Shown here piece after piece: positions 1,345 through 56,334 of a stretch of DNA of 64,000 nt. The notes below the pieces were generated by a model. That model was given only the letters and a program-made list of their open reading frames with translations. It had not been told where the DNA came from and did no database searches. The position numbers were made by a program, and so were the translations under genes. This stretch comes from Vitrella brassicaformis CCMP3155. Taxonomy: Eukaryota; Protista; Chromerida. The stretch's first letter is position 1. Every line of letters begins with the position of its first letter. The stretch lies in NCBI GenBank assembly GCA_001179505.1, contig CDMY01000217.1:62001-126000 (forward strand), written 5' to 3'.

Positions 1345-1527
1345 GGACAATGAGCTCATGTCGAGACCCAATCACAGCCATCCACCAACATACACATTTT
1401 CCCCTCCAGACACGCTGCCCTACCTCCCCGCCACCGCCCCCTCCACCCACTGATCCCCTCGGCCGACGTCGATCTTTGGTGGGCCGGCCAGGGGAAATGC
1501 CCGGCCAGTGAGAAATGCCACACGTCA
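1345..1527 (-). pseudogene. TLDc-domain gene relic
   Basis: The minus strand reads DVWHFSLAGHF, then a frameshift before PTKIDV, and GR* where paralogues have GRE. DNA resembles 55440-55530. Confidence 0.7.
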
Positions 1528-4184: not shown

Positions 4185-5479
4185 TCACTGCCCACCCACG
4201 TGCAGCACCTCTATCTCATCCGCATGAAAACAGACCGAGCCGCCCAGCAGAGCATGGCCATCGCTATTCCTCTCCCCGACATAGCCCGCAGTCAAAAAGT
4301 CCCTGTCGGTGAGCTGTGCACAGCTGCGGATGTCGGCAGCCGGCCTGCCACTGCCACGGCCGTCACCCAACAACAGGTCCCCACTGATGTACACTTTCCC
4401 ACCCCACCCACTCCCCTCCCTCCCCGCCACTATCACATACTGCACCGCTCGGTCGACGTCTATCTTGGTGGGCTTGGGGATGTGGCCGGCCAGCGAGAAA
4501 TACCACAAGTCACACTCGTACCAGTTGATGTCGGTGGGTCCGTCGGGCAGCTCCAGACCGGCACTGATGAAGGCGCCGAAAACGTACTGGTTCTTGCGGA
4601 TGATGAAGGCCAGGCCGGTCTTGTCGCCCACACACCGCAGCAGATCGCCGTAAGTGGTGCCGTCACGCGACGCCCTGATGCACACACATATCAATGACAC
4701 ATCAGATGGCCATATGTGTGTGTGTGTGTACCTGTAGATGAGTGTGAGTGATGTGTGGCCCCCCAGCCACTTGGCGATGTGCGCCACATACGACAGGCCG
4801 ACGGAGCTGCCAATGGGCCAGCAGGGACGGCCAGCGACAAATGACACACCCCGAGGGCCGTGCGCCCAGGCGAAGGCGGCCCTACACACACATGGGGACC
4901 ACACAGCTGTGTATCATCTCTTTGTGTGTGTGGGTGCCGTGTGTCTGTGTGTGTTTACCTGCAGACGGGGCAGATGGCGCCGGGTGTCCGTATCTAATGC
5001 GCTGCACAACACACTGAAGGACAGAGAGGACACACAGATGAGTGAATGGCTCCACCGCCATCCATCGCCACACTCACACACAGAGATCGTCCTGGATGCT
5101 CACCTCTGCACACACCGAATGGCCTGAAGGGACACAGAGGGCACACCACCACACCAAATGCCTTAGCCTGTCCGTCAAATGGTGTGCTGCTCACCGTCCA
5201 CTCTCAGTACGCTGCCGCTGTTGTCCTTGCCACATCGGCTGCTGCACTTGGCCGCCACTGCTGTCGATGGCGATGCTTCGCCAAAGAGGCCGTACTTGCG
5301 ATTGTTGACACACTGCCAGTGGAACTGATGACCTGCACCACAAACACAGACAGATCAAACATGCCTTCACTGGATGGATGGATGTGGTGGCTCACTGACT
5401 GACCACATGGCATCTTGTTGGCCGCCGATGAGCTACCAGCAGCACCACCAGCGGCAGCGGCAGATGAGGAGGCCGCCAT
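4185..5479 (-). CDS. TLDc-domain protein 1, no signal peptide, with Cys/His-rich RING-like N-terminus
   Basis: Seven exons join in phase: MAASSSAAAAGG...MPCG/HQFHWQC...KCSSRC...GHSVCAE/CVVQ...LIYR/ASRDGTTYGDLLRCVGD...YVFGAF...WYFSLAG...FHADEIEVLHV*. These are the YRASRDG, FGAF and EIEV hallmarks of TLDc. Confidence 0.8.
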
Positions 5480-9275: not shown

Positions 9276-10329
9276 GCCGCTGTGAGATCGGCCGATGAGT
9301 CGACGAGCTGATGTCAGTGAACTGACTGTCTGTCTCTCTGCCGCGTGGACGGCATCGATGGACTGACGGCTGTCGTGTTTATGAGAGTGTGTTGTGTTGT
9401 GGGGCTTTGCGTGTCGGTCGGTCTGGCTGCCATTGTCATTGCTCTGTCACCTCCCACTCCTCGGCCGTCAGCTGCCATGAGTGTGTCGGCTGATGAGTGG
9501 GGGGCGGGGGAGAGATGACAGACAGACAGACAGACAGAGAGGGAGGATTGGCTGGCTGGCTGCACAAAGGAATCGCTGTGTGGCGTGGCGGTGGCCGTCT
9601 GTCTGTGGTGCGGCCGGTGTGACGTCTGCTTGCGAGAGTCTGTTGATCTCTCGTCGATGCATCCGTCACACACGGCCGGCTCACAGACAGACAGGCCGAC
9701 ACACACACACACATAGTTTGGCTGAGAGAGAGAGAGAGAGAGTATTGGTTTTCCCCCTCTCTGTGAGCATCTACGTTCTCGTCTGGCAACTCGAGAGCGT
9801 CAGCCCACGAAGGGTGTTGGTGCTTTAGGGTTGCGAGGCGGCGACAGAGATGCCCACAGAGGGGCGGGCGATTGAGATGGACACACACGGCTGCTTACCC
9901 ATTCCACCAAATGAGGCGGTGGATGGATGGTGTTTGGTGTTGCTGTGGTGTGAGATTCGTGTGTCGGTGTGCTGTGCGTCCTGATGTCATGCTTGTATAC
10001 CCACACAGACACAGACGTGTTGATTGATGGATCGATGTGTTTTGATGCATGCCGTTGTCGGTTTGGTTTTTCTCTCGTGTGATGTTTGTGTGTTGGTGAG
10101 CTGACTGTCGTCGATTCATTCGACGGACATTTGACGCCCCACAGACAGACAGACAGACAGCCATGTATCCTACCTGTTGGCCTGGCCTGTTGTCGCCAGC
10201 TGTGTTCTGTTTGACGAAGGTGTGTTTTGTCCGTAGGGGACAGACAGACTGACATAAATGGGGATGGATGGACCTCATGCAACGCTGGGGTGTTTCTGTG
10301 CCTCTGTTGAGTGAGAGAGACGTCGGTTT

Positions 10330-10696
10330 GGTTTGAGTGAATGAGTAAATGTGTTCGATGAGGGACGGGTGGGCAAGACATCGACAGACACACAGATGTG
10401 ATGAGCTTTGCATGGCGAGTCCATTGACGGACAAAGGGGACTGATGTGCACACCCTCTTGTGGTGCGTCCATCCAGCCAGCCAGCCAGTCAGTACAGCCC
10501 ATTATATACGCCGCACACACCCCATGCGGCGACTTGAATAAAGAAGCAACTGCATTTCTCCCCAAATCGTCTAATCCCCTCTGTTACACCACATGCACCA
10601 TGCACTAGGTGTGTTTATGTGAGGCACACAAAAGCGAATCGAACCTCCATAAAGCACTCATCTCATCGTACGCCAAATCGAAACGTTCCCCCTTCC
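10330..10696. repeat. Conserved 3' flank of secreted TLDc genes, copy 1
   Basis: GATGTGCACACCCTCTTGTGGTGC...AAAAGCGAATCGAACCTCCATAAAGCACTCATCTCA recurs at ~49280-49650 and partly at ~52700-52900. Confidence 0.85.
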
Positions 10697-11227
10697 TCAC
10701 CTGCTATTCCCCATCACGTGAAGCACCTCTATCTCATCTGCCTGGAAATACACCGACCCGCCCAGATAAGCCCTGCCAAAGCTGTCCCTCTCGCCCGTAC
10801 CGCCATCGTCATCCCTCGCCCCCGTGTAGCCCTCAGGCAGATAGCCGCTGTCGATAGACTGCCAGCAGCTGCGGATGTAAGGCCGGTAACCCAAATAAAG
10901 CCGCCCACCGATCTCCACATTCGCAGCCCCAGACAGACCCCCCTCCCTGCCCGCCACTACCACAAAGTGATCCCATTCGTCGATGTCAATCTTGGTCGGC
11001 TTGTCGAAGTGCCCGGCCAGCGAAAACCACCACAGGACACACTCGTACTTATGCCAGTCAGTCGGCTCGTCGGGCAGCTCCAGGCCGCAGTTGATGTGGA
11101 CGCTGAAGACATACTTGTCCTTTCTGATTACAAACACGAGAGGCTCTGCGTCGCCCACACTGTCCAGCAGGTCATCGTAGGTGGTGCCGTCCACAGACGT
11201 CCTACGCCAGACACACACACACACACA

Positions 11228-11276
<49 letters not shown>

Positions 11277-11551
11277 TTGCATACCGGTAGAGTGAGTTGA
11301 GTTCTGTGCCATTGTGATTGCCCATCAAGTCGACCAGCGCCTCATACTCTGCCGCAGACAGCGACGTGTTGCCAGGAGGGGACACCTGCACCCGACGCAA
11401 ATGCACCTGGACACACAGCCATTCACACCAGAGCATCGAATGAATGGATCGATGGCCTCCGTGTGTGGTGCACCTGCTGTCCCTCTGCGCCAACACACGT
11501 CAAGCTGAGAGTCATCATCAGCAGCGCAGCACACGTGGAGAGCTGTCCCAT
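10697..11551 (-). CDS. Secreted-type TLDc-domain protein 2
   Basis: Three exons: MGQLSTCAALLMMTLSLTCVGAEGQQ / VHLRRVQVSPPGNTSL...NSLYR / TSVDGTTYDDLLDSVGD...WWFSLAG...FQADEIEVLHVMGNSR*. Splice phases are consistent. Confidence 0.8.
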
Positions 11552-12214
11552 CGCGTGTAGCTAGATCTTTCCGCTCAAACTGTTCGAGAGCCCAGCCCCC
11601 TTAAGCTCTCACCGCAAATGCCACGGGGAGGCAGCGCAGCGTGAGCGCAGATATGTAGGAAGCAGCGGCTGCCCTCAGTTGCCAAGGTCCGCTGACCGAA
11701 GCTGCACAGAAGAAAGCGGTGCGTATTGTGATACCTGGCGGTGCAGACGATGAACAAGACAGCAGTGAGTGAGATCAGGGAGAAGAGATCAGAGAGACTC
11801 TCTCCCTCTCGGGGCTCATCGCTCGGGTGCTCTCGTTGCAGATCTCTCCACTCAGACTTCTTGTAAAGCTCTCCCCATTGACGCTCCCGCCGACTCGCCA
11901 TCTTTGTGTGTGGAGCGCACTGGAGAAGCGGGGCGCGAGCTTCTGGAACAAGCTTTTCCTCTCTCAGCCCTCCCTTCTCTCCAGATGGTCCTGTGGACTC
12001 TCACTGGACAATCTCGTGCACCGAAAAGGCCAAACGAATGTGTGAGCTTCGAGAAAAACGGCAATTCGATCCCACTCGATCACCGACTTCCGCAAATTAA
12101 TTTTTTGATTTCATCACATTGACCGCTCCGCAGTGAGACCGTTGACACGACGGAAGAGACAAACAGGCGAAAGAAACGCGGCAAAGGCTGGGGGTCTGCT
12201 GGGGCCTTTCATGC

Positions 12215-49653: not shown

Positions 49654-50507
49654 TCACGTCACGTGAAGCACCTCTATCTCATCCGCCATGAAGTAATTCT
49701 TAAACGACCCGCCCAGCCGAGCATGGCCACCGGCATCCCTCTTCCCCGTGTAGCCCTCAGGCACATAGTCGCTGGGAATGCGCTGTGCACAGCTGCGGAT
49801 GTCGGCAGCTGGCTGGTCACTGTGCTCGTCGTCACCCAGAGCCAGCCAATCACCGATTCTCACACTCCCACGATCCCGCGCACTCCCCTCCCTCCCCTCC
49901 CTCCCCGCCACCGTCACCCACTCATCCTCTCGGTCGATGTCGATCTTGGTCGGCGTGTCGAAGTGGCCGGTCAGCGAAAACCACCACAGGTCACAGTCGT
50001 ACTCGTGCATGCCGGTCGGAGTGTCAGGCAGCATCAGACCGCAGTTAATGAAGGCGCCGAAGACATACTTGTCCTTTCTGATTACAAACACGAGAGGCTC
50101 TGCGTCGCCCACACTGTCCAGCAGGTCATCGTAAGTGGTGCCGTTCACCGACGACCTACGGCCCCCCCCCGCACACACACACACACACACACACGCGCAG
50201 ATCTCTCTCTCTCTCCCTTTGTGTGTGTGTGTGTAATTGCATACCGGTACAGGGAGGTGATATTGAGTTCTGTGCCATTGTCACTGCCCATCAAGTCGAG
50301 CAGCCCCTGATACTCTGACGCAGACAACGACGTGCCGTCAGGCGGGGACACCTGCTGCTGCACTCGACGGACCTGCACACAAGGCACAGCCACAGAGCGG
50401 ATGACTAATCTAATGAATGAAGGGCCACAGCCTACCAGATGGGCCTCCGTCCACGCCAAGCTGAGAGTCACCATCAGCAGTGCAGCACACCTGCAGTGCC
50501 GTGCCAT
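49654..50507 (-). CDS. Secreted-type TLDc-domain protein 3
   Basis: MARHCRCAALLMVTLSLAWTEAHL / VRRVQQQVSPPDGTSL...NITSLYR / SSVNGTTYDDLL...FGAFINCG...WWFSLTG...FMADEIEVLHVT*. Confidence 0.85.
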
Positions 50508-50869
50508 CGCGTCGACGAAAGAAAGTCTTTGTCGTCAGTCTAGCCACAGGCAGCCTGATGAACAAGACAGCAGTGAGCGAGACGACGGGAGTGAGCACAC
50601 CACCTGGGAGGAGAGAGAGATCTGCTTTTCGCAGCGGTTTCAGGGAGCACCCTAGGCGGCCTGACAAAATCTGCTTGTCACCTCGAGTTCAGACAACCGA
50701 TCCATCTGTGTCTTCCGACTTCCTCCGGCCAGATTTGTCGTCAGTCGTCCACTTTGGCCTCGTCGGTGAGGTCGGCGGCAGAGATGCGCACGCGGCGAGT
50801 CACTCAGGTGAGCGAGGGAGGGAGGGAGGCCTCGTGCGCCGCCATGTAAGGCGGCTGCTCGGCTCTGTG

Positions 50870-52980: not shown

Positions 52981-53605
52981 TCACATCATGCGAAAGGACA
53001 TGCAAAATAGAAACAACGAGAGCCACAGACAGACACACGTCCGCGTCGCTGATGATGAAATCGTTGGTGATGATATGAAAGGCGCCTGCAGCACTTCTAT
53101 CTCATCTGCATGAAACCTATACGACCCGCCCAGCAGAGCACCGACGCTCGACTCCCCCGTATAGCCCGCAGGCATAAAGCTGCTGGTAGTGTACTGCGCA
53201 CAGTTGCGGATGTCGCCATCATGTACCCACCCATCTTCCGGTACCCACCGATACAACTCGTCCAACTTCAGGTACCCACCCAACCTCCGGTACCCACCAA
53301 TCATCACACTCACACCGCCCGCACTGTGCCCCGCCACCATCACATCCACCCCCTGATACATTTCGCGGGCGTCGATCTTGGTCGGCTTGGCGAAATGCCC
53401 GGCCAGCGAAAACCATCGCACGTCACACTCATAGTCGTTGTAGTCGGTCGGGTCATCGGGCAGCTCCAGACCGCAATTGATGTGAACGCCGAAGACATAC
53501 TTGTCCTTTCTGATTACAAACACGAGAGGCTCTGCGTCGCCCACACTGTTCAGCAGGTCATCGTAAGTGGTGCCGTGCACAGACGACCTACGCCACACAC
53601 ACACA

Positions 53606-53650
<45 letters not shown>

Positions 53651-53790
53651 ATGATTGCGTACCGATACAGTGAGGTGACATTGTCAGTGCCCATCAAGTC
53701 GAGCAGCCCCTCATACTCTGACGCGGACAACGATGTGTTCTCAGGTGGGACACCAGCTGCACTCGAGGACCGCTGTAATACCCATCCACA
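52981..53790 (-). CDS. TLDc-domain copy 4, lacking its own signal exon, with a hydrophobic C-terminal tail
   Basis: ...PENTSLSASEYEGLLDLMGTDNVTSLYR / SSVHGTTY...FHADEIEVLQAPFISSPTISSSATRTCVCLWLSLFLFCMSFRMM*. Its 5' end abuts the 3' flank of the upstream copy. Confidence 0.6.
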
Positions 53791-53830: not shown

Positions 53831-56031
53831 TTACCTACTATTCCCAACCACGTGAAGCACCTCTATCTCATCCGCATTGAAATCGGATTTATACGACCCC
53901 AGATGAGCATCGCCATTCCAATCGCGCTCCCCCGTATAGCCCGCAGGCACGTCGTCGCTGTCGGTGATCTGCACACAGCTGCGGATGTCGGCAGCCGACC
54001 GGTCACTGTCCTTAGCGTCACCCAACCGCAGGTACCCACCGATTCTCACATTCCCGCGCTCCCCTCCCTCCCCGTCACCCCCACCCACTGCTTGTCTTCG
54101 TCGACATCAATCTTGGTCGGCTTTGCGAAGTGGCCGGCCAGCGAGAAATGCCACAAATCACACTCATACTTGTGGAGTCTCGTGGAGTTGTCGGTCAGCT
54201 GCAGACCGCAATTAATAAAGGCGCCGAAGACATACTTGTCCTTTCTGATTACAAACACGAGAGGCTCTGCGTCGCCCACACTGTCCAGCAGGTCATCGTA
54301 AGTGGTTCCGTACACAGACGTCCTACGACACACACACATACACACAGAGAGAGAGAACGCCACACACACATGCATCACGTCATGCATCTATCTCTCTCTC
54401 TCTGTGTGTGTGTGTGTAATTGCCTACCGGTACAGTGAGGTGAGTTCCGTGCCATTGTCATTGCCCATCAAGTCGAGCAGCCCATCATATTCAAACCCGG
54501 ACAACGACGTGCCGTTAGGCGGGGACACCCATCCGCCGTCATACCCATCCACCTGCAGCACCTCCATCTTATCCGCATGGAAGAAGTCCGACCCGCCCAG
54601 AACTGCACCACCGCCGTGATACTCCCCTGTGTAGCCTTCAGGCACATCGTCGCTGTGGGTGTACTGATAGCAGCTGCGGATGTCGGCAGCCGGCCGGCCA
54701 CTGTTCTCGTCGTCACCCAAATACAGAGCCCCACCGATCTTCACATTCGCACCCCACGCACTCCCCTCCCTCCCCGCCACCCGCACATTCTGCTCCCTTC
54801 GGAGCTTGGTCGGCGTGTCGAAGTGGCCGGCCAGCGAGAAATGCCACAGGTCACAGTCGTACCAGTGCCTGCCGGTCGGGTCGTCGGGCAGCTTCAGACC
54901 GCAATTGATGAAGGCGCCGAAGACGTACTTGTCCTTTCTGATGACAAACACGAGAGGCTCTGCGTCGCCCACACTGTCCAGCAGGTCATCGTAAGTGGTG
55001 CCGTTCACCGACGACCTACGCCACACACACACACACACACACAAAACACACACCTCTCTCTCCCTCTGTGTGTGTGTCTGTATGATTGCATACCGGTACA
55101 GTGAGGTGACATTGAGTTCTGTGCCATTGTTACTGCCCATCAAGTCGAGCAGTGCCTTATACTGTGACGCAGACAACGACGTGCCCTCAGGCGGAGACAC
55201 CGGCTGCCCGCCCACGCGCAGCACCTCTATCTCATCCGCATGGAAATTCTCCGACCCGCCCAGCACAGCACTGCCAGGTTCGCTCGACACGCCCACATAG
55301 CCCTCAGGCACATGCCACTTCCTCTGACGGCAGCTGCGGATGTCGGCAGCTGGCTGGTCACTGTCCTCGTCGATACCCAGCCGCAGGGACTCACTGAGCG
55401 GCCCACCGATCTCCACATTCGCACCCCACACACGCCCCTCCCTCCCCGCCACCCACACCCACTGATCGTCTTCGTCGAACTCGATCTTGGTCGGCTGGGC
55501 GAAGTGGCCGGCCAGCGAGAAATGCCACAGATCACACCAGTACTTATGGCTGTCGGTGGGGTCGTCGGGCAGCTTCAGACCGCAATTGATGAAGGCGCCG
55601 AAGACGTACTTGTCCTTTCTGAAGACAAACACGAGAGGCTCTGCGTCGCCCACACTGTCCAGCAGGTCACCGTAAGTGGTGCCGTTCACCGACGACCTAC
55701 GCCACACACACACACACACACCTCCCTCTGTGTGTGTGTGTGTGTGTGATTGTGTGTGATTGCATACCGGTATAGTGAGTTGAGGTCTGTGCCATTGTCA
55801 CTGCCCATCAAGTCGAGCAGCCCCTGATACTCTGACGCAGACAACGACGTGCCCTCAGGCAGGGACACCTGCTGCTGAACTCGACGGACTTGCACACAAG
55901 GCACAGCCACAGAGCAAATGACTAATCCAATGAACGAATGGGCCACAGCGTACCTGTTGGGCCTCCGAGTCAGTCCACGCCAAGCTGAGAGTCACCAGCA
56001 GCAGCGCAGCACACCTGCAGTGTCGTGCCAT
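53831..56031 (-). CDS. Secreted-type tandem triple-TLDc protein; third domain frameshifted near 54055
   Basis: Signal exon MARHCRCAALLLVTLSLAWTDSEAQQ. Each domain is followed in frame by the next unit's VSPPxGTSLS..SLYR and the same phase-2 intron. Domain 3 switches frame at GREGSAG/NVRIGG. Confidence 0.8.
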
Positions 56032-56334
56032 CGCGTTGACGAAAGAAAGTTTTTCTCGTTCAGTCCAGCCACAGGCAGCCTATGTGATGAACAAGACAGC
56101 AGTGAGCGAGACGACGGGAGAGGGTGTAGGCAGAGAGAGAGATCTGCCCTTCGCAGCGGTTTCAGGGAGCACCCTAGGCGGCCTGACAAAATCTGCTTTT
56201 CACCTGCAGCTCAGACAACCGATCCATCTGGCGGTAAGCAGCTACTAGTAGTTGCGATGACGAGTCCTGGGTGACCCCGCCCTCCGAGTCTTTTGCGAGT
56301 CCGATTGGGAGATCTCCCGTTTCCTGAAGCGTTG

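What the first reader, a model, noticed from the sequence alone, without database searches (positions are those of the whole stretch)
10697..11551. Secreted TLDc-domain proteins: a cytosolic V-ATPase-regulator fold apparently re-routed to the secretory pathway
Characterised TLDc proteins (OXR1, NCOA7, TBC1D24, MEAK7, yeast Oxr1 and Rtc5) are cytosolic and bind the V-ATPase V1 sector. Here three genes (ATG at 11551, 50507 and 56031) begin with a separate exon encoding a classic signal peptide (core CAALLxxTLSL) spliced in phase to a bare TLDc domain. These copies carry several Nx(S/T) sequons (NTS, NGT, NIT, NVT) and an extra Cys in FINCG that could pair with YxCD. The signal-less TLDc1 has FISAG and lacks those sequons. 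This contrast suggests a lumenal or extracellular TLDc family with a new function such as wall, cyst or ligand binding. I know of no description of this but cannot search.
Basis: partly seen in the sequence, partly recalled or inferred. Interest (0 to 1): 0.8.

Follow-up and report, generated by a model that had tools for sequence, protein, structure and literature searches.

The report
Secretory TLDc gene family in Vitrella
Three genes in this piece of the alga Vitrella brassicaformis join a secretion-signal exon to TLDc domains, a fold otherwise known only from cytosolic partners of the V-ATPase proton pump, so this branch of the family very probably works in the secretory pathway or on the cell surface, though nobody has yet shown where the proteins go.

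Summary
The window is Vitrella brassicaformis CCMP3155. Genes starting at 11551, 50507 and 56031 (minus strand) each have a phase-0 first exon. It encodes a hydrophobic leader (CAALLxxTLSL) joined to TLDc exons. For gene A, spliced contigs in two RNA-like runs show the leader exon joined to exon 2 at 11474|11406. An in-frame TAG lies four codons before the ATG. The spliced products pass Pfam's TLD threshold, and the AlphaFold model matches only TLDc structures.

Four indirect lines favour secretory routing:
- Leader-bearing domains carry four times more N-x-S/T sequons than leaderless paralogues.
- The FINCG Cys occurs only together with the YxC Cys; in leader-bearing copies that lack it, the YxC Cys is usually lost.
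- Some paralogues end in GPI/TM-like tails.
- Two paralogues carry an extracellular LNR module.

No localisation or SignalP result exists, and the function is unknown.

Corrections: gene C is a tandem array of TLDc domains with a frameshift, not a bare domain. The signal-less copy is a Cys/His-rich (RING-like)–TLDc protein.

The subfamily has 222 representatives, and every named one is from Vitrella. The scan found this family before on other DNA of this genome (s1-205488, s1-252817). No paper I could search describes it.

The parts
11474..11551 (-). Gene A exon 1: start codon and signal-peptide-like leader (26 codons, phase 0)
   Evidence: Spliced to exon 2 in contigs of runs X1 and X4. In-frame TAG at 11563-11561.
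11407..11473 (-). Gene A intron 1 (67 nt, GT..AG)
   Evidence: Joint 11401/11403 -> 11469/11471 with cut +5/+3 in X1 and X4. Unspliced contigs in the DNA-like runs X3 and X5. Splice sites checked.
11285..11406 (-). Gene A exon 2: linker and N-terminal helix of the TLDc domain, with sequons NTS and NGT
   Evidence: Pfam TLD covers P0001 residues 33-215.
11202..11284 (-). Gene A intron 2, a (CA)n(GA)n(TG)n microsatellite intron
   Evidence: The equivalent junction is spliced in transcript contig L002 for unit C4.
10697..11201 (-). Gene A exon 3: body of the TLDc domain and stop codon
   Evidence: AF2 model pLDDT 83. Foldseek hits are TLDc structures only.
11552..11900 (-). Probable 5' UTR of gene A. 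Holds a 108-codon upstream ORF (11901-11575) and a 21-nt motif at 11769-11749.
   Evidence: RNA-like runs X1 and X4 cover up to about 11840-11915 and nothing beyond. The nearest annotated upstream gene ends 3.7 kb away..
49654..50507 (-). Gene B: exons 50507-50436 (leader), 50372-50245 (linker) and 50155-49654 (TLDc body and stop)
   Evidence: P0007 is an exact substring. Pfam TLD 30.1 bits.
55954..56031 (-). Gene C exon 1: leader. It has no internal Met, so this ATG is the only possible start in the exon.
   Evidence: The annotated P0022 starts here.
53831..55874 (-). Gene C tandem TLDc units 1-3. Exons are 55874-55768, 55696-55094, 55015-54428 and 54322-53831. There is a frameshift near 54056-54049, and the stop TAA 53833-53831 lies inside a GTAAGG donor.
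52981..53789 (-). Unit C4: linker exon (VPPENTS starts at 53751; exon ends at 53663) and body 53587-52981. It ends in a hydrophobic GPI/TM-like tail and has no leader exon of its own.
   Evidence: Transcript contig L002 is 99.6% identical over 53588-52776.
4185..5333 (-). Gene D, the signal-less paralogue (P0038, 280 aa): Cys/His-rich RING-like N-terminus plus a TLDc domain with FISAG and no sequon
1366..1497 (-). Short TLDc-like fragment, probably a gene remnant
   Evidence: tblastn, frames shown.

Best explanation
Genes A, B and C belong to a Vitrella-specific, heavily expanded and very divergent TLDc subfamily. In one branch a short phase-0 exon encoding a cleavable ER signal peptide stands where the RING-like, BTB-like or coiled-coil N-termini of cytosolic paralogues stand.

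What is shown: the gene structure, the splicing of the leader exon in gene A, the TLDc fold, and the family-wide contrasts in sequons, cysteines, C-terminal tails and the LNR fusion.

What is inferred:
- The leader takes the nascent chain through Sec61 into the ER and is cut near the conserved ...AEA/AEG|QQ site.
- The coil sequons before the first strand are N-glycosylated.
- The Cys after strand 86-92 (FINCG) bonds with the Cys of YxCD.
- The product is secreted, or held at the surface in those copies that have a hydrophobic C-terminal tail.

The C-terminal two thirds of the domain diverge faster than the introns and UTRs. The most likely role is therefore a variable extracellular binding or wall/surface protein, not a V-ATPase regulator.
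For: - **Organism and models:** P0001 and P0007 are exact substrings of my spliced models.
- **Splicing:** contigs of X1 and X4 skip 11473-11407, and their depth in the intron is 2-10 against 72-1238 beside it. X3 and X5 hold the unspliced form and also cover intergenic DNA.
- **Start codon:** there is an in-frame TAG 4 codons upstream and no other ATG between 11818 and 11552. Gene C has no internal Met in its leader.
- **Leader anatomy:** an uncharged core of 14-19 residues with mean Kyte-Doolittle 2.1-2.5 over 10 aa, Arg residues before it in B and C, and small residues at -3/-1. The RING-type N-termini score 0.8-1.2.
- **TLDc identity:** Pfam TLD gives 31.8, 30.1 and 126.2 bits against a cut-off of 24.5. 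The AF2 model has pLDDT 83 and pTM 0.81. The top 16 Foldseek hits are all TLDc structures.
- **Sequons:** 2.29 per leader-type domain against 0.58 per leaderless domain (Mann-Whitney p = 2e-9), concentrated at coil positions 27-28 and 45-47.
- **Cysteines:** C94 is present in 10 of 24 leader-type domains and 2 of 79 leaderless ones, always together with C110. Where C94 is absent, leader-type domains lack C110 in 11 of 14 cases, against 16 of 77 leaderless ones.
- **C-terminal tails:** hydrophobic tails occur only in leader-type relatives.
- **LNR fusions:** P0076 is SP-LNR-TLDc (leader-like N-terminus); P0167 is LNR-TLDc, its N-terminus not examined (LNR).
- **Transcript support in paralogues:** transcriptome ORFs of paralogues start with the leader. 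P0005 is an MMETSP sequence; P0071 is recorded as 'type:complete'.
Against: - No SignalP or DeepLoc run, no localisation and no proteomics are available.
- The genome annotation starts A and B at Met12, which would truncate the hydrophobic core.
- RNA-like coverage runs about 300-360 nt upstream of the ATG. It may include a 108-codon upstream ORF that could reduce translation of the main ORF.
- Logan contigs cannot show strand or transcript ends.
- The invariant third Cys (IRSC) leaves an odd number of cysteines.
- mEAK-7, a cytosolic protein, also has a Cys in the FINCG column.
- The sequon and Cys statistics are not corrected for relatedness, and the tree is too weak to do that.
- dN/dS near 1 and the frameshift in gene C also fit partial decay.
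Confidence: 0.68

Rival explanations
1. The leader is the first half of a bipartite plastid-targeting signal, or a signal for another internal compartment of the endomembrane system. The TLDc domain would then work inside the complex plastid or an internal lumen rather than outside the cell.
For: Vitrella has a complex plastid whose proteins enter through the ER (established knowledge; Woo et al. 2015 use SignalP plus TargetP for this). One paralogue group has Phe just after the predicted cleavage site...HA|FVRP...DA|FMSP (P0036, P0071, P0084). That recalls the red-lineage plastid motif (recalled from memory).
Against: In A, B and C the residue after the likely cut is Q, E or W, not F. Only about 10-15 residues lie between the cut and the VSPPxxTSLS segment. 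That segment is part of the domain, because the cytosolic RING paralogue P0011 shares it, so there is no room for a transit peptide. GPI/TM-like tails and LNR fusions point to the surface. There is no KDEL/HDEL ending.
Confidence: 0.08
2. The hydrophobic N-terminus is not used. Translation starts at the annotated internal Met (A, B) or is suppressed by the upstream ORF, and the proteins are cytosolic TLDc proteins like their RING- and BTB-type paralogues.
For: The public annotation starts P0001 and P0007 at Met12. There is a long 5' UTR with an upstream ATG at 11901.
Against: - Gene C and many paralogues have no internal Met in the leader, and they are annotated, or found in transcriptome ORFs, from the first ATG.
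- The leader exon is 98.7% identical between gene A and contig L004. It is kept as a separate phase-0 exon in all copies.
- The sequon, cysteine, tail and LNR contrasts would have no explanation.
Confidence: 0.1
3. The cluster is mostly decaying recent duplicates without a maintained function. The leader is inherited baggage, and the fast change of the body is neutral drift.
For: dN/dS is 0.6-1.4 in the last two thirds of the domain. There is a frameshift in unit C3, unit C4 has no leader, and there is a fragment at 1366-1497.
Against: - A, B, C1, C2 and C4 keep open frames of 165-200 codons, and the invariant core residues are kept.
- dN/dS is 0.3-0.6 in the first third in most pairs (0.76 for C1-C2).
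- Transcripts exist.
- Synonymous divergence in the body (0.34) far exceeds that of the flanks (about 0.06). This calls for exchange between copies rather than simple decay.
Confidence: 0.12

Closest known systems
Canonical TLDc proteins (OXR1, NCOA7, TBC1D24/Skywalker, TLDC2, mEAK-7; yeast Oxr1p and Rtc5p)
   Same: Same fold: the top 16 Foldseek hits are 6r82, 7obp, 7uzg_T, 7u8o_U, 4acj, 7fde_P, 9nn1_R and related entries, all at probability 0.96-1.00. The Pfam TLD match is above threshold. The core motifs around NCOA7 G815/S817 (Y.T..GT[TS]) and G845 (FG) are kept.
   Different: The canonical proteins are cytosolic and bind the V1 sector of the V-ATPase (PMC8608904; structures listed). The Vitrella proteins have only 11-17% identity to them. 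They add a signal-peptide exon, conserved sequons, an extra Cys, in some copies a GPI/TM-like tail or an LNR module, and tandem TLDc arrays. No V-ATPase link is known for them.
Cytosolic paralogues of the same Vitrella subfamily (RING-like-TLDc such as P0011, P0019 and gene D/P0038; BTB-like and coiled-coil TLDc)
   Same: 50-60% identity in the TLDc body, the same linker segment (VSPPEGTSL in P0011) and the same invariant IRSC Cys.
   Different: No leader. 0.58 sequons per domain against 2.29. The FINCG Cys is present in 2 of 79 domains against 10 of 24. No C-terminal hydrophobic tails.
Secreted gene families with a conserved signal region and a hypervariable mature part (for example conotoxins; comparison from general knowledge)
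   Same: The leader exon, introns and UTRs are 93-99% identical while the mature domain is 77-85% identical between gene A and contig L004.
   Different: Here synonymous sites diverge as well (dS 0.34). Exchange of body exons between paralogues is therefore at least as likely as positive selection. The domain is a 200-residue globular fold, not a small peptide.

Membership tests
TLDc domain (Pfam PF07534) | Profile match above Pfam's gathering score | tested here: met
   P0001 31.8 bits, P0007 30.1 bits and P0022 126.2 bits (4 stretches), against a cut-off of 24.5. The body exons alone score 19.9-27.0 bits.
TLDc domain (Pfam PF07534) | TLDc fold (beta-sandwich with flanking helices) | tested here: met
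   AF2 model pLDDT 83.2, pTM 0.81. The top 16 Foldseek PDB hits are all TLDc structures, with TM-score by target of 0.5-0.69 for single-domain entries.
TLDc domain (Pfam PF07534) | Conserved core residues equivalent to NCOA7 G815/S817 and G845 | tested here: met
   G61 is invariant and G89 nearly invariant in alignment A1. HMMER alignments to mEAK-7 and NCOA7 place them on the HG[TS] and FG motifs. The residues are defined in PMC8608904. Gene A itself has Ser at the G89 position.
V-ATPase-interacting TLDc proteins | Physical binding to the V1 sector of the V-ATPase | not testable with these tools
   This needs pull-down or cryo-EM. A lumenal or extracellular location would exclude contact with the cytosolic V1.
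Classical cleavable ER signal peptide | N-terminal n-region, 7-15+ residue hydrophobic h-region, and c-region with small residues at -3/-1 | tested here: met
   Heuristic scoring. The cores are 14-19 uncharged residues with KD 2.1-2.5. Candidate cut sites are VGA|EG and AEG|QQ (A), AWT|EA (B), and SEA|QQ (C).
Classical cleavable ER signal peptide | Prediction by a trained method (SignalP, DeepLoc) and experimental cleavage or translocation | not testable with these tools
   No such predictor is available here, and there are no localisation data in the literature searched.
Classical cleavable ER signal peptide | The leader is in the mature mRNA and starts at the first in-frame AUG | tested here: inconclusive
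   Met for splicing and for the in-frame stop upstream. Contigs cannot give the 5' end, and an upstream ORF may lie in the UTR. B and C were not tested with reads.
GPI-anchored or tail-anchored surface protein | C-terminal hydrophobic stretch after a short polar spacer | tested here: not met
   Genes A and B end in ...HVMGNSR and ...EVLHVT with no tail. Only unit C4 and the paralogues P0021, P0039, P0052 and P0013 have such a tail.
Bipartite plastid-targeting leader | A transit peptide of some tens of residues after the signal peptide, often starting with Phe | tested here: not met
   About 10-15 residues lie before the conserved domain segment that the cytosolic P0011 shares. The +1 residue is Q, E or W in A, B and C.

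The most novel reading that the evidence does not exclude
Vitrella has turned the TLDc fold into a variable extracellular recognition scaffold. This would be a lineage-specific family of secreted, glycosylated and partly lipid- or membrane-anchored TLDc proteins. Their exposed C-terminal face would be diversified by exchange of body exons between tandem copies, helped by near-identical flanks and microsatellite introns. The family would serve surface recognition: wall or cyst assembly, or interaction with coral-associated microbes or hosts.
Probability: 0.2. Interest if true: 0.75.

Novelty: new variant of a known kind. Interest (0 to 1): 0.52.

Why it matters
All functional and structural work on the TLDc domain treats it as a cytosolic module that binds and regulates the V-ATPase. 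A branch that is built for the secretory pathway would show that the fold has a second life outside the cytosol. Its features are a signal exon, conserved glycosylation sites, a cysteine pair, GPI/TM-like tails and fusion to an extracellular LNR module. Such a branch would give a natural set of V-ATPase-independent TLDc proteins for comparison. It would also add a large, fast-changing surface or secreted protein family to a free-living relative of apicomplexan parasites, where the origin of extracellular protein repertoires is an open question.

The limits are plain. The evidence is all computational, the family is confined to one little-studied alga, and the same family was already flagged elsewhere in this genome by this scan.

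Tried and rejected
- **Transcript contigs with the leader.** Two exact DNA-pattern scans of metagenome contigs found nothing. One used the spliced exon1-exon2 junction of gene A, the other a degenerate pattern for the leader core of A, B and C. The 5' ends of transcripts therefore stay unknown.
- **Cys-Cys distance.** The AF2 job returns no coordinates. Only covariation and secondary-structure positions could be used for the proposed disulfide.
- **Single origin of the leader.** A FastTree of 133 domain segments is poorly supported: 19 of 130 branches are starred and the leader state needs 7 changes. I make no claim about one or several origins.
- **Literature.** Searches for TLDc with signal peptide, secreted, extracellular or Vitrella gave nothing relevant. 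So did the main text and 16 supplements of Woo et al. 2015.
- **Loss of the V1-binding surface.** Not assessable. The residues known to matter are mostly structural and are conserved in both types.
- **Reading gene C as the annotated 742-aa protein.** Rejected. That model skips a frameshift with tiny artificial introns and ends out of frame.
- **Reads on genes B and C.** Not possible, because the single read-laying run was used on gene A.

Full report
**What is there**

The window comes from Vitrella brassicaformis CCMP3155, contig CDMY01000217.1. The body exon of the gene in question matches the annotated protein P0001 at 100% identity, and all named relatives are from Vitrella. All TLDc copies lie on the minus strand.

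Gene A has three exons:
- Exon 1, 11551-11474: 26 codons, phase 0.
- Exon 2, 11406-11285.
- Exon 3, 11201-10697, including the stop.
- The introns are 11473-11407 (GT..AG, 67 nt) and 11284-11202, a (CA)n(GA)n(TG)n stretch.

Gene B has the same plan: 50507-50436, 50372-50245, 50155-49654. The spliced products are 234 and 233 aa. The annotated proteins P0001 and P0007 are exact substrings of them that begin at Met12. The public models therefore use the same splicing but a later start codon.

Gene C starts at 56031. Its leader has no internal Met, and its annotated product P0022 starts at that ATG.

**Is the leader exon real?**

I laid the contigs of four public runs on 10300-12100.
- Runs X1 and X4 carry a joint that removes exactly 11473-11407. 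They have almost no depth inside that intron (2.5 and 9.7, against 72-1238 beside it), and none beyond about 11885-11946.
- Runs X3 and X5 carry an unspliced contig across the intron and also cover the intergenic DNA.

X1 and X4 thus behave as RNA and X3 and X5 as DNA. The leader exon is joined to exon 2 at 11474|11406 in the RNA-like runs.

X4 also has a mismatch-free contig across the start codon (11510-11610). An in-frame TAG lies four codons upstream of the ATG, and there is no other ATG between 11818 and 11552.

Two caveats apply. Contigs cannot give strand or ends. RNA-like coverage also continues about 300-360 nt upstream, where a 108-codon upstream ORF (11901-11575) may lie in the UTR. 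The nearest annotated upstream gene ends 3.7 kb away.

Transcript contig L002 shows the linker-to-body splice of unit C4.

**Is it a TLDc domain?**

The body exons alone score 20-27 bits against Pfam TLD. The spliced products pass the 24.5-bit threshold: P0001 31.8, P0007 30.1, P0022 126.2 in four stretches.

An AlphaFold2 model of P0001, built with 23 family sequences, has pLDDT 83 and pTM 0.81. Its best 16 Foldseek matches in the PDB are all TLDc structures: Skywalker/TBC1D24, NCOA7, mEAK-7 on the V-ATPase, zebrafish OXR2, and yeast Oxr1p and Rtc5p. Sequence identity is 11-17%.

The motifs around NCOA7 G815/S817 and G845 are kept. Mutating those residues abolishes V-ATPase binding (PMC8608904).

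**Does the leader look like a signal peptide?**

The three leaders have:
- an uncharged core of 14-19 residues, with mean Kyte-Doolittle hydropathy of 2.1-2.5 over 10 residues;
- two Arg residues before the core in B and C;
- small residues at -3/-1 in a conserved ...AEA/AEG|QQ region.

The N-termini of the RING-type paralogues score 0.8-1.2. The core is too short for a membrane anchor. This is a heuristic; SignalP was not available.

**Family-wide contrasts**

A profile search of 1.8 billion representative proteins found only 222 relatives at E <= 0.001. I looked up 30 of them, including the ten weakest listed. Every one that carries a name is from Vitrella brassicaformis. None is from Chromera. 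This is a lineage-specific, very divergent TLDc subfamily.

Its members carry many N-terminal arrangements: a leader (about 30 of some 170 sequences retrieved), RING, BTB-like, coiled-coil, membrane anchor plus coiled coil, LNR, and tandem TLDc.

I compared near-complete domain segments, 24 from leader-type and 79 from leaderless proteins.

- **Sequons.** Leader-type domains carry 2.29 N-x-S/T sequons against 0.58 (1.01 against 0.27 per 100 residues; Mann-Whitney p = 2e-9). The sequons cluster at positions 27-28 and 45-47, which are coil in the model. Gene D and the RING-type P0011 and P0015 have none.
- **Cysteines.** The Cys of FINCG (C94 in P0001) occurs in 10 of 24 leader-type domains and 2 of 79 leaderless ones, always together with the Cys of YxC (C110). 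Leader-type domains without C94 have lost C110 in 11 of 14 cases. Leaderless domains keep C110 in 63 of 79. This is the pattern expected if an unpaired thiol is either paired or removed in an oxidising compartment.
- **C-terminal tails.** Hydrophobic tails of the GPI/TM kind occur only in leader-type relatives: P0021, P0039, P0052, P0013 and unit C4.
- **LNR fusion.** P0076 has a leader-like N-terminus, then an LNR (Notch) module, then TLDc. P0167 also has LNR and TLDc. LNR is an extracellular, disulfide-rich module (general knowledge).

These counts are not corrected for relatedness, and a tree of the domains is too weak to do that.

Three points weaken the disulfide argument:
- The invariant IRSC Cys leaves an odd number of cysteines.
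- Cytosolic mEAK-7 also has a Cys in the FINCG column.

Gene C is not a bare domain. After the leader come unit 1, unit 2 and unit 3, in which each body runs directly into the next linker. There is a frameshift near 54056-54049 in unit 3. The stop TAA (53833-53831) lies inside a GTAAGG donor. Transcript contigs L002 and L003 splice from 53835 into the next linker exon, but out of frame. The annotated 742-aa protein steps over the frameshift with artificial introns and ends out of frame.

Unit C4 (53751-52981) has no leader of its own and ends in a hydrophobic tail.

The signal-less copy D is P0038 (5333-4185). It has a Cys/His-rich, RING-like N-terminus and a TLDc domain.

**How it most likely works**

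Shown: the gene structures, the splice, the fold and the contrasts above.

Inferred:
- co-translational entry into the ER;
- cleavage near ...AEA/AEG|QQ;
- N-glycosylation of the coil sequons;
- a C94-C110 disulfide;
- secretion, or surface attachment in the copies with a tail.

A plastid route is unlikely. Only about 10-15 residues separate the likely cut from a segment (VSPPxxTSLS) that the cytosolic paralogue P0011 shares, and the +1 residue is not Phe in A, B or C. A cytosolic reading from Met12 does not explain gene C or any of the contrasts.

**Mode of evolution**

Gene A and an environmental contig (L004, ENA ERZ893784) are 93-99% identical in the upstream region, UTR, leader exon, both introns, linker exon and 3' flank. 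They are only 85%, 77% and 79% identical in the three thirds of the body exon.

Synonymous divergence in the body is 0.34, against about 0.06 in the flanks. dN/dS is 0.3-0.8 (mostly 0.3-0.6) in the first third and 0.6-1.4 in the rest, among A, B, C1, C2 and L004. This points to exchange of body exons between copies, together with relaxed or diversifying selection on the C-terminal two thirds.

**Novelty**

Searches of 8 million open papers and preprints found no description of a secreted or extracellular TLDc protein. The Vitrella genome paper and its supplements do not mention the family. The proteins exist in databases only as 'TLDc domain-containing protein'.

The scan itself had already flagged and followed up the same family on other DNA of this genome (s1-205488, s1-252817) and on this window (s1-201878). 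My results agree with those.

I rate it a new variant of a known kind. It is of moderate interest, limited by the lack of any experimental localisation.

Noticed in passing
window 10350-11900 compared with L004:450-2100: Mosaic divergence between gene A and an environmental contig. Flanks, introns and the leader exon are 93-99% identical, but the TLDc body exon is 77-85% identical. dS in the body is 0.34 against about 0.06 in the flanks. dN/dS is about 1 in the last two thirds. This suggests exchange of body exons between paralogues, with or without diversifying selection.
   Followed up: partly
window 53831-54069: Gene C unit 3 has a frameshift near 54056-54049. Its stop TAA lies inside a GTAAGG donor. 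Transcript contigs L002 and L003 splice from 53835 into the next linker exon, out of frame. The annotated 742-aa P0022 is a patched model.
   Followed up: partly
window 52981-53080: Unit C4 ends in a Ser-rich spacer and a hydrophobic tail (...CVCLWLSLFLFCMSFRMM), like a GPI signal or a tail anchor. Similar tails occur in P0021, P0039, P0052 and P0013, and in no RING/BTB-type paralogue.
   Followed up: partly
window 11575-11901 (minus strand): A 108-codon upstream ORF lies ahead of gene A's start, probably inside the 5' UTR. It stays open, including across an in-frame indel, in contig L004.
   Followed up: partly
window 11749-11769, 50557-50577, 56086-56106: An identical 21-nt motif (CTCACTGCTGTCTTGTTCATC on the minus strand) lies upstream of all three leader-bearing genes. 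It is about 200 nt from the ATG in A and about 50-75 nt in B and C. It may be a shared promoter or UTR element.
   Followed up: no
window 11202-11284, 50156-50244, 55697-55767 and the equivalent introns of gene C: The intron between the linker and body exons is in every unit a (CA)n(GA)n(TG)n microsatellite block. The scan also noted this (s1-212249). Such blocks could favour recombination between copies.
   Followed up: no
P0076 and P0167 (other Vitrella contigs): Two paralogues combine an LNR (Notch) module with a TLDc domain, an architecture I have not seen described. P0076 also has a leader-like N-terminus.
   Followed up: partly
window 1366-1497: A short TLDc-like fragment (FSLAGHF...PTKIDV...) without a surrounding open frame; probably a gene remnant.
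   Followed up: no
family as a whole: The Vitrella TLDc subfamily has 222 representatives at 50% identity in 1.8 billion proteins. All 30 members looked up that carry a name are from Vitrella. This is a very large lineage-specific expansion with many N-terminal partners: RING, BTB-like, coiled coil, TM anchor.
   Followed up: partly
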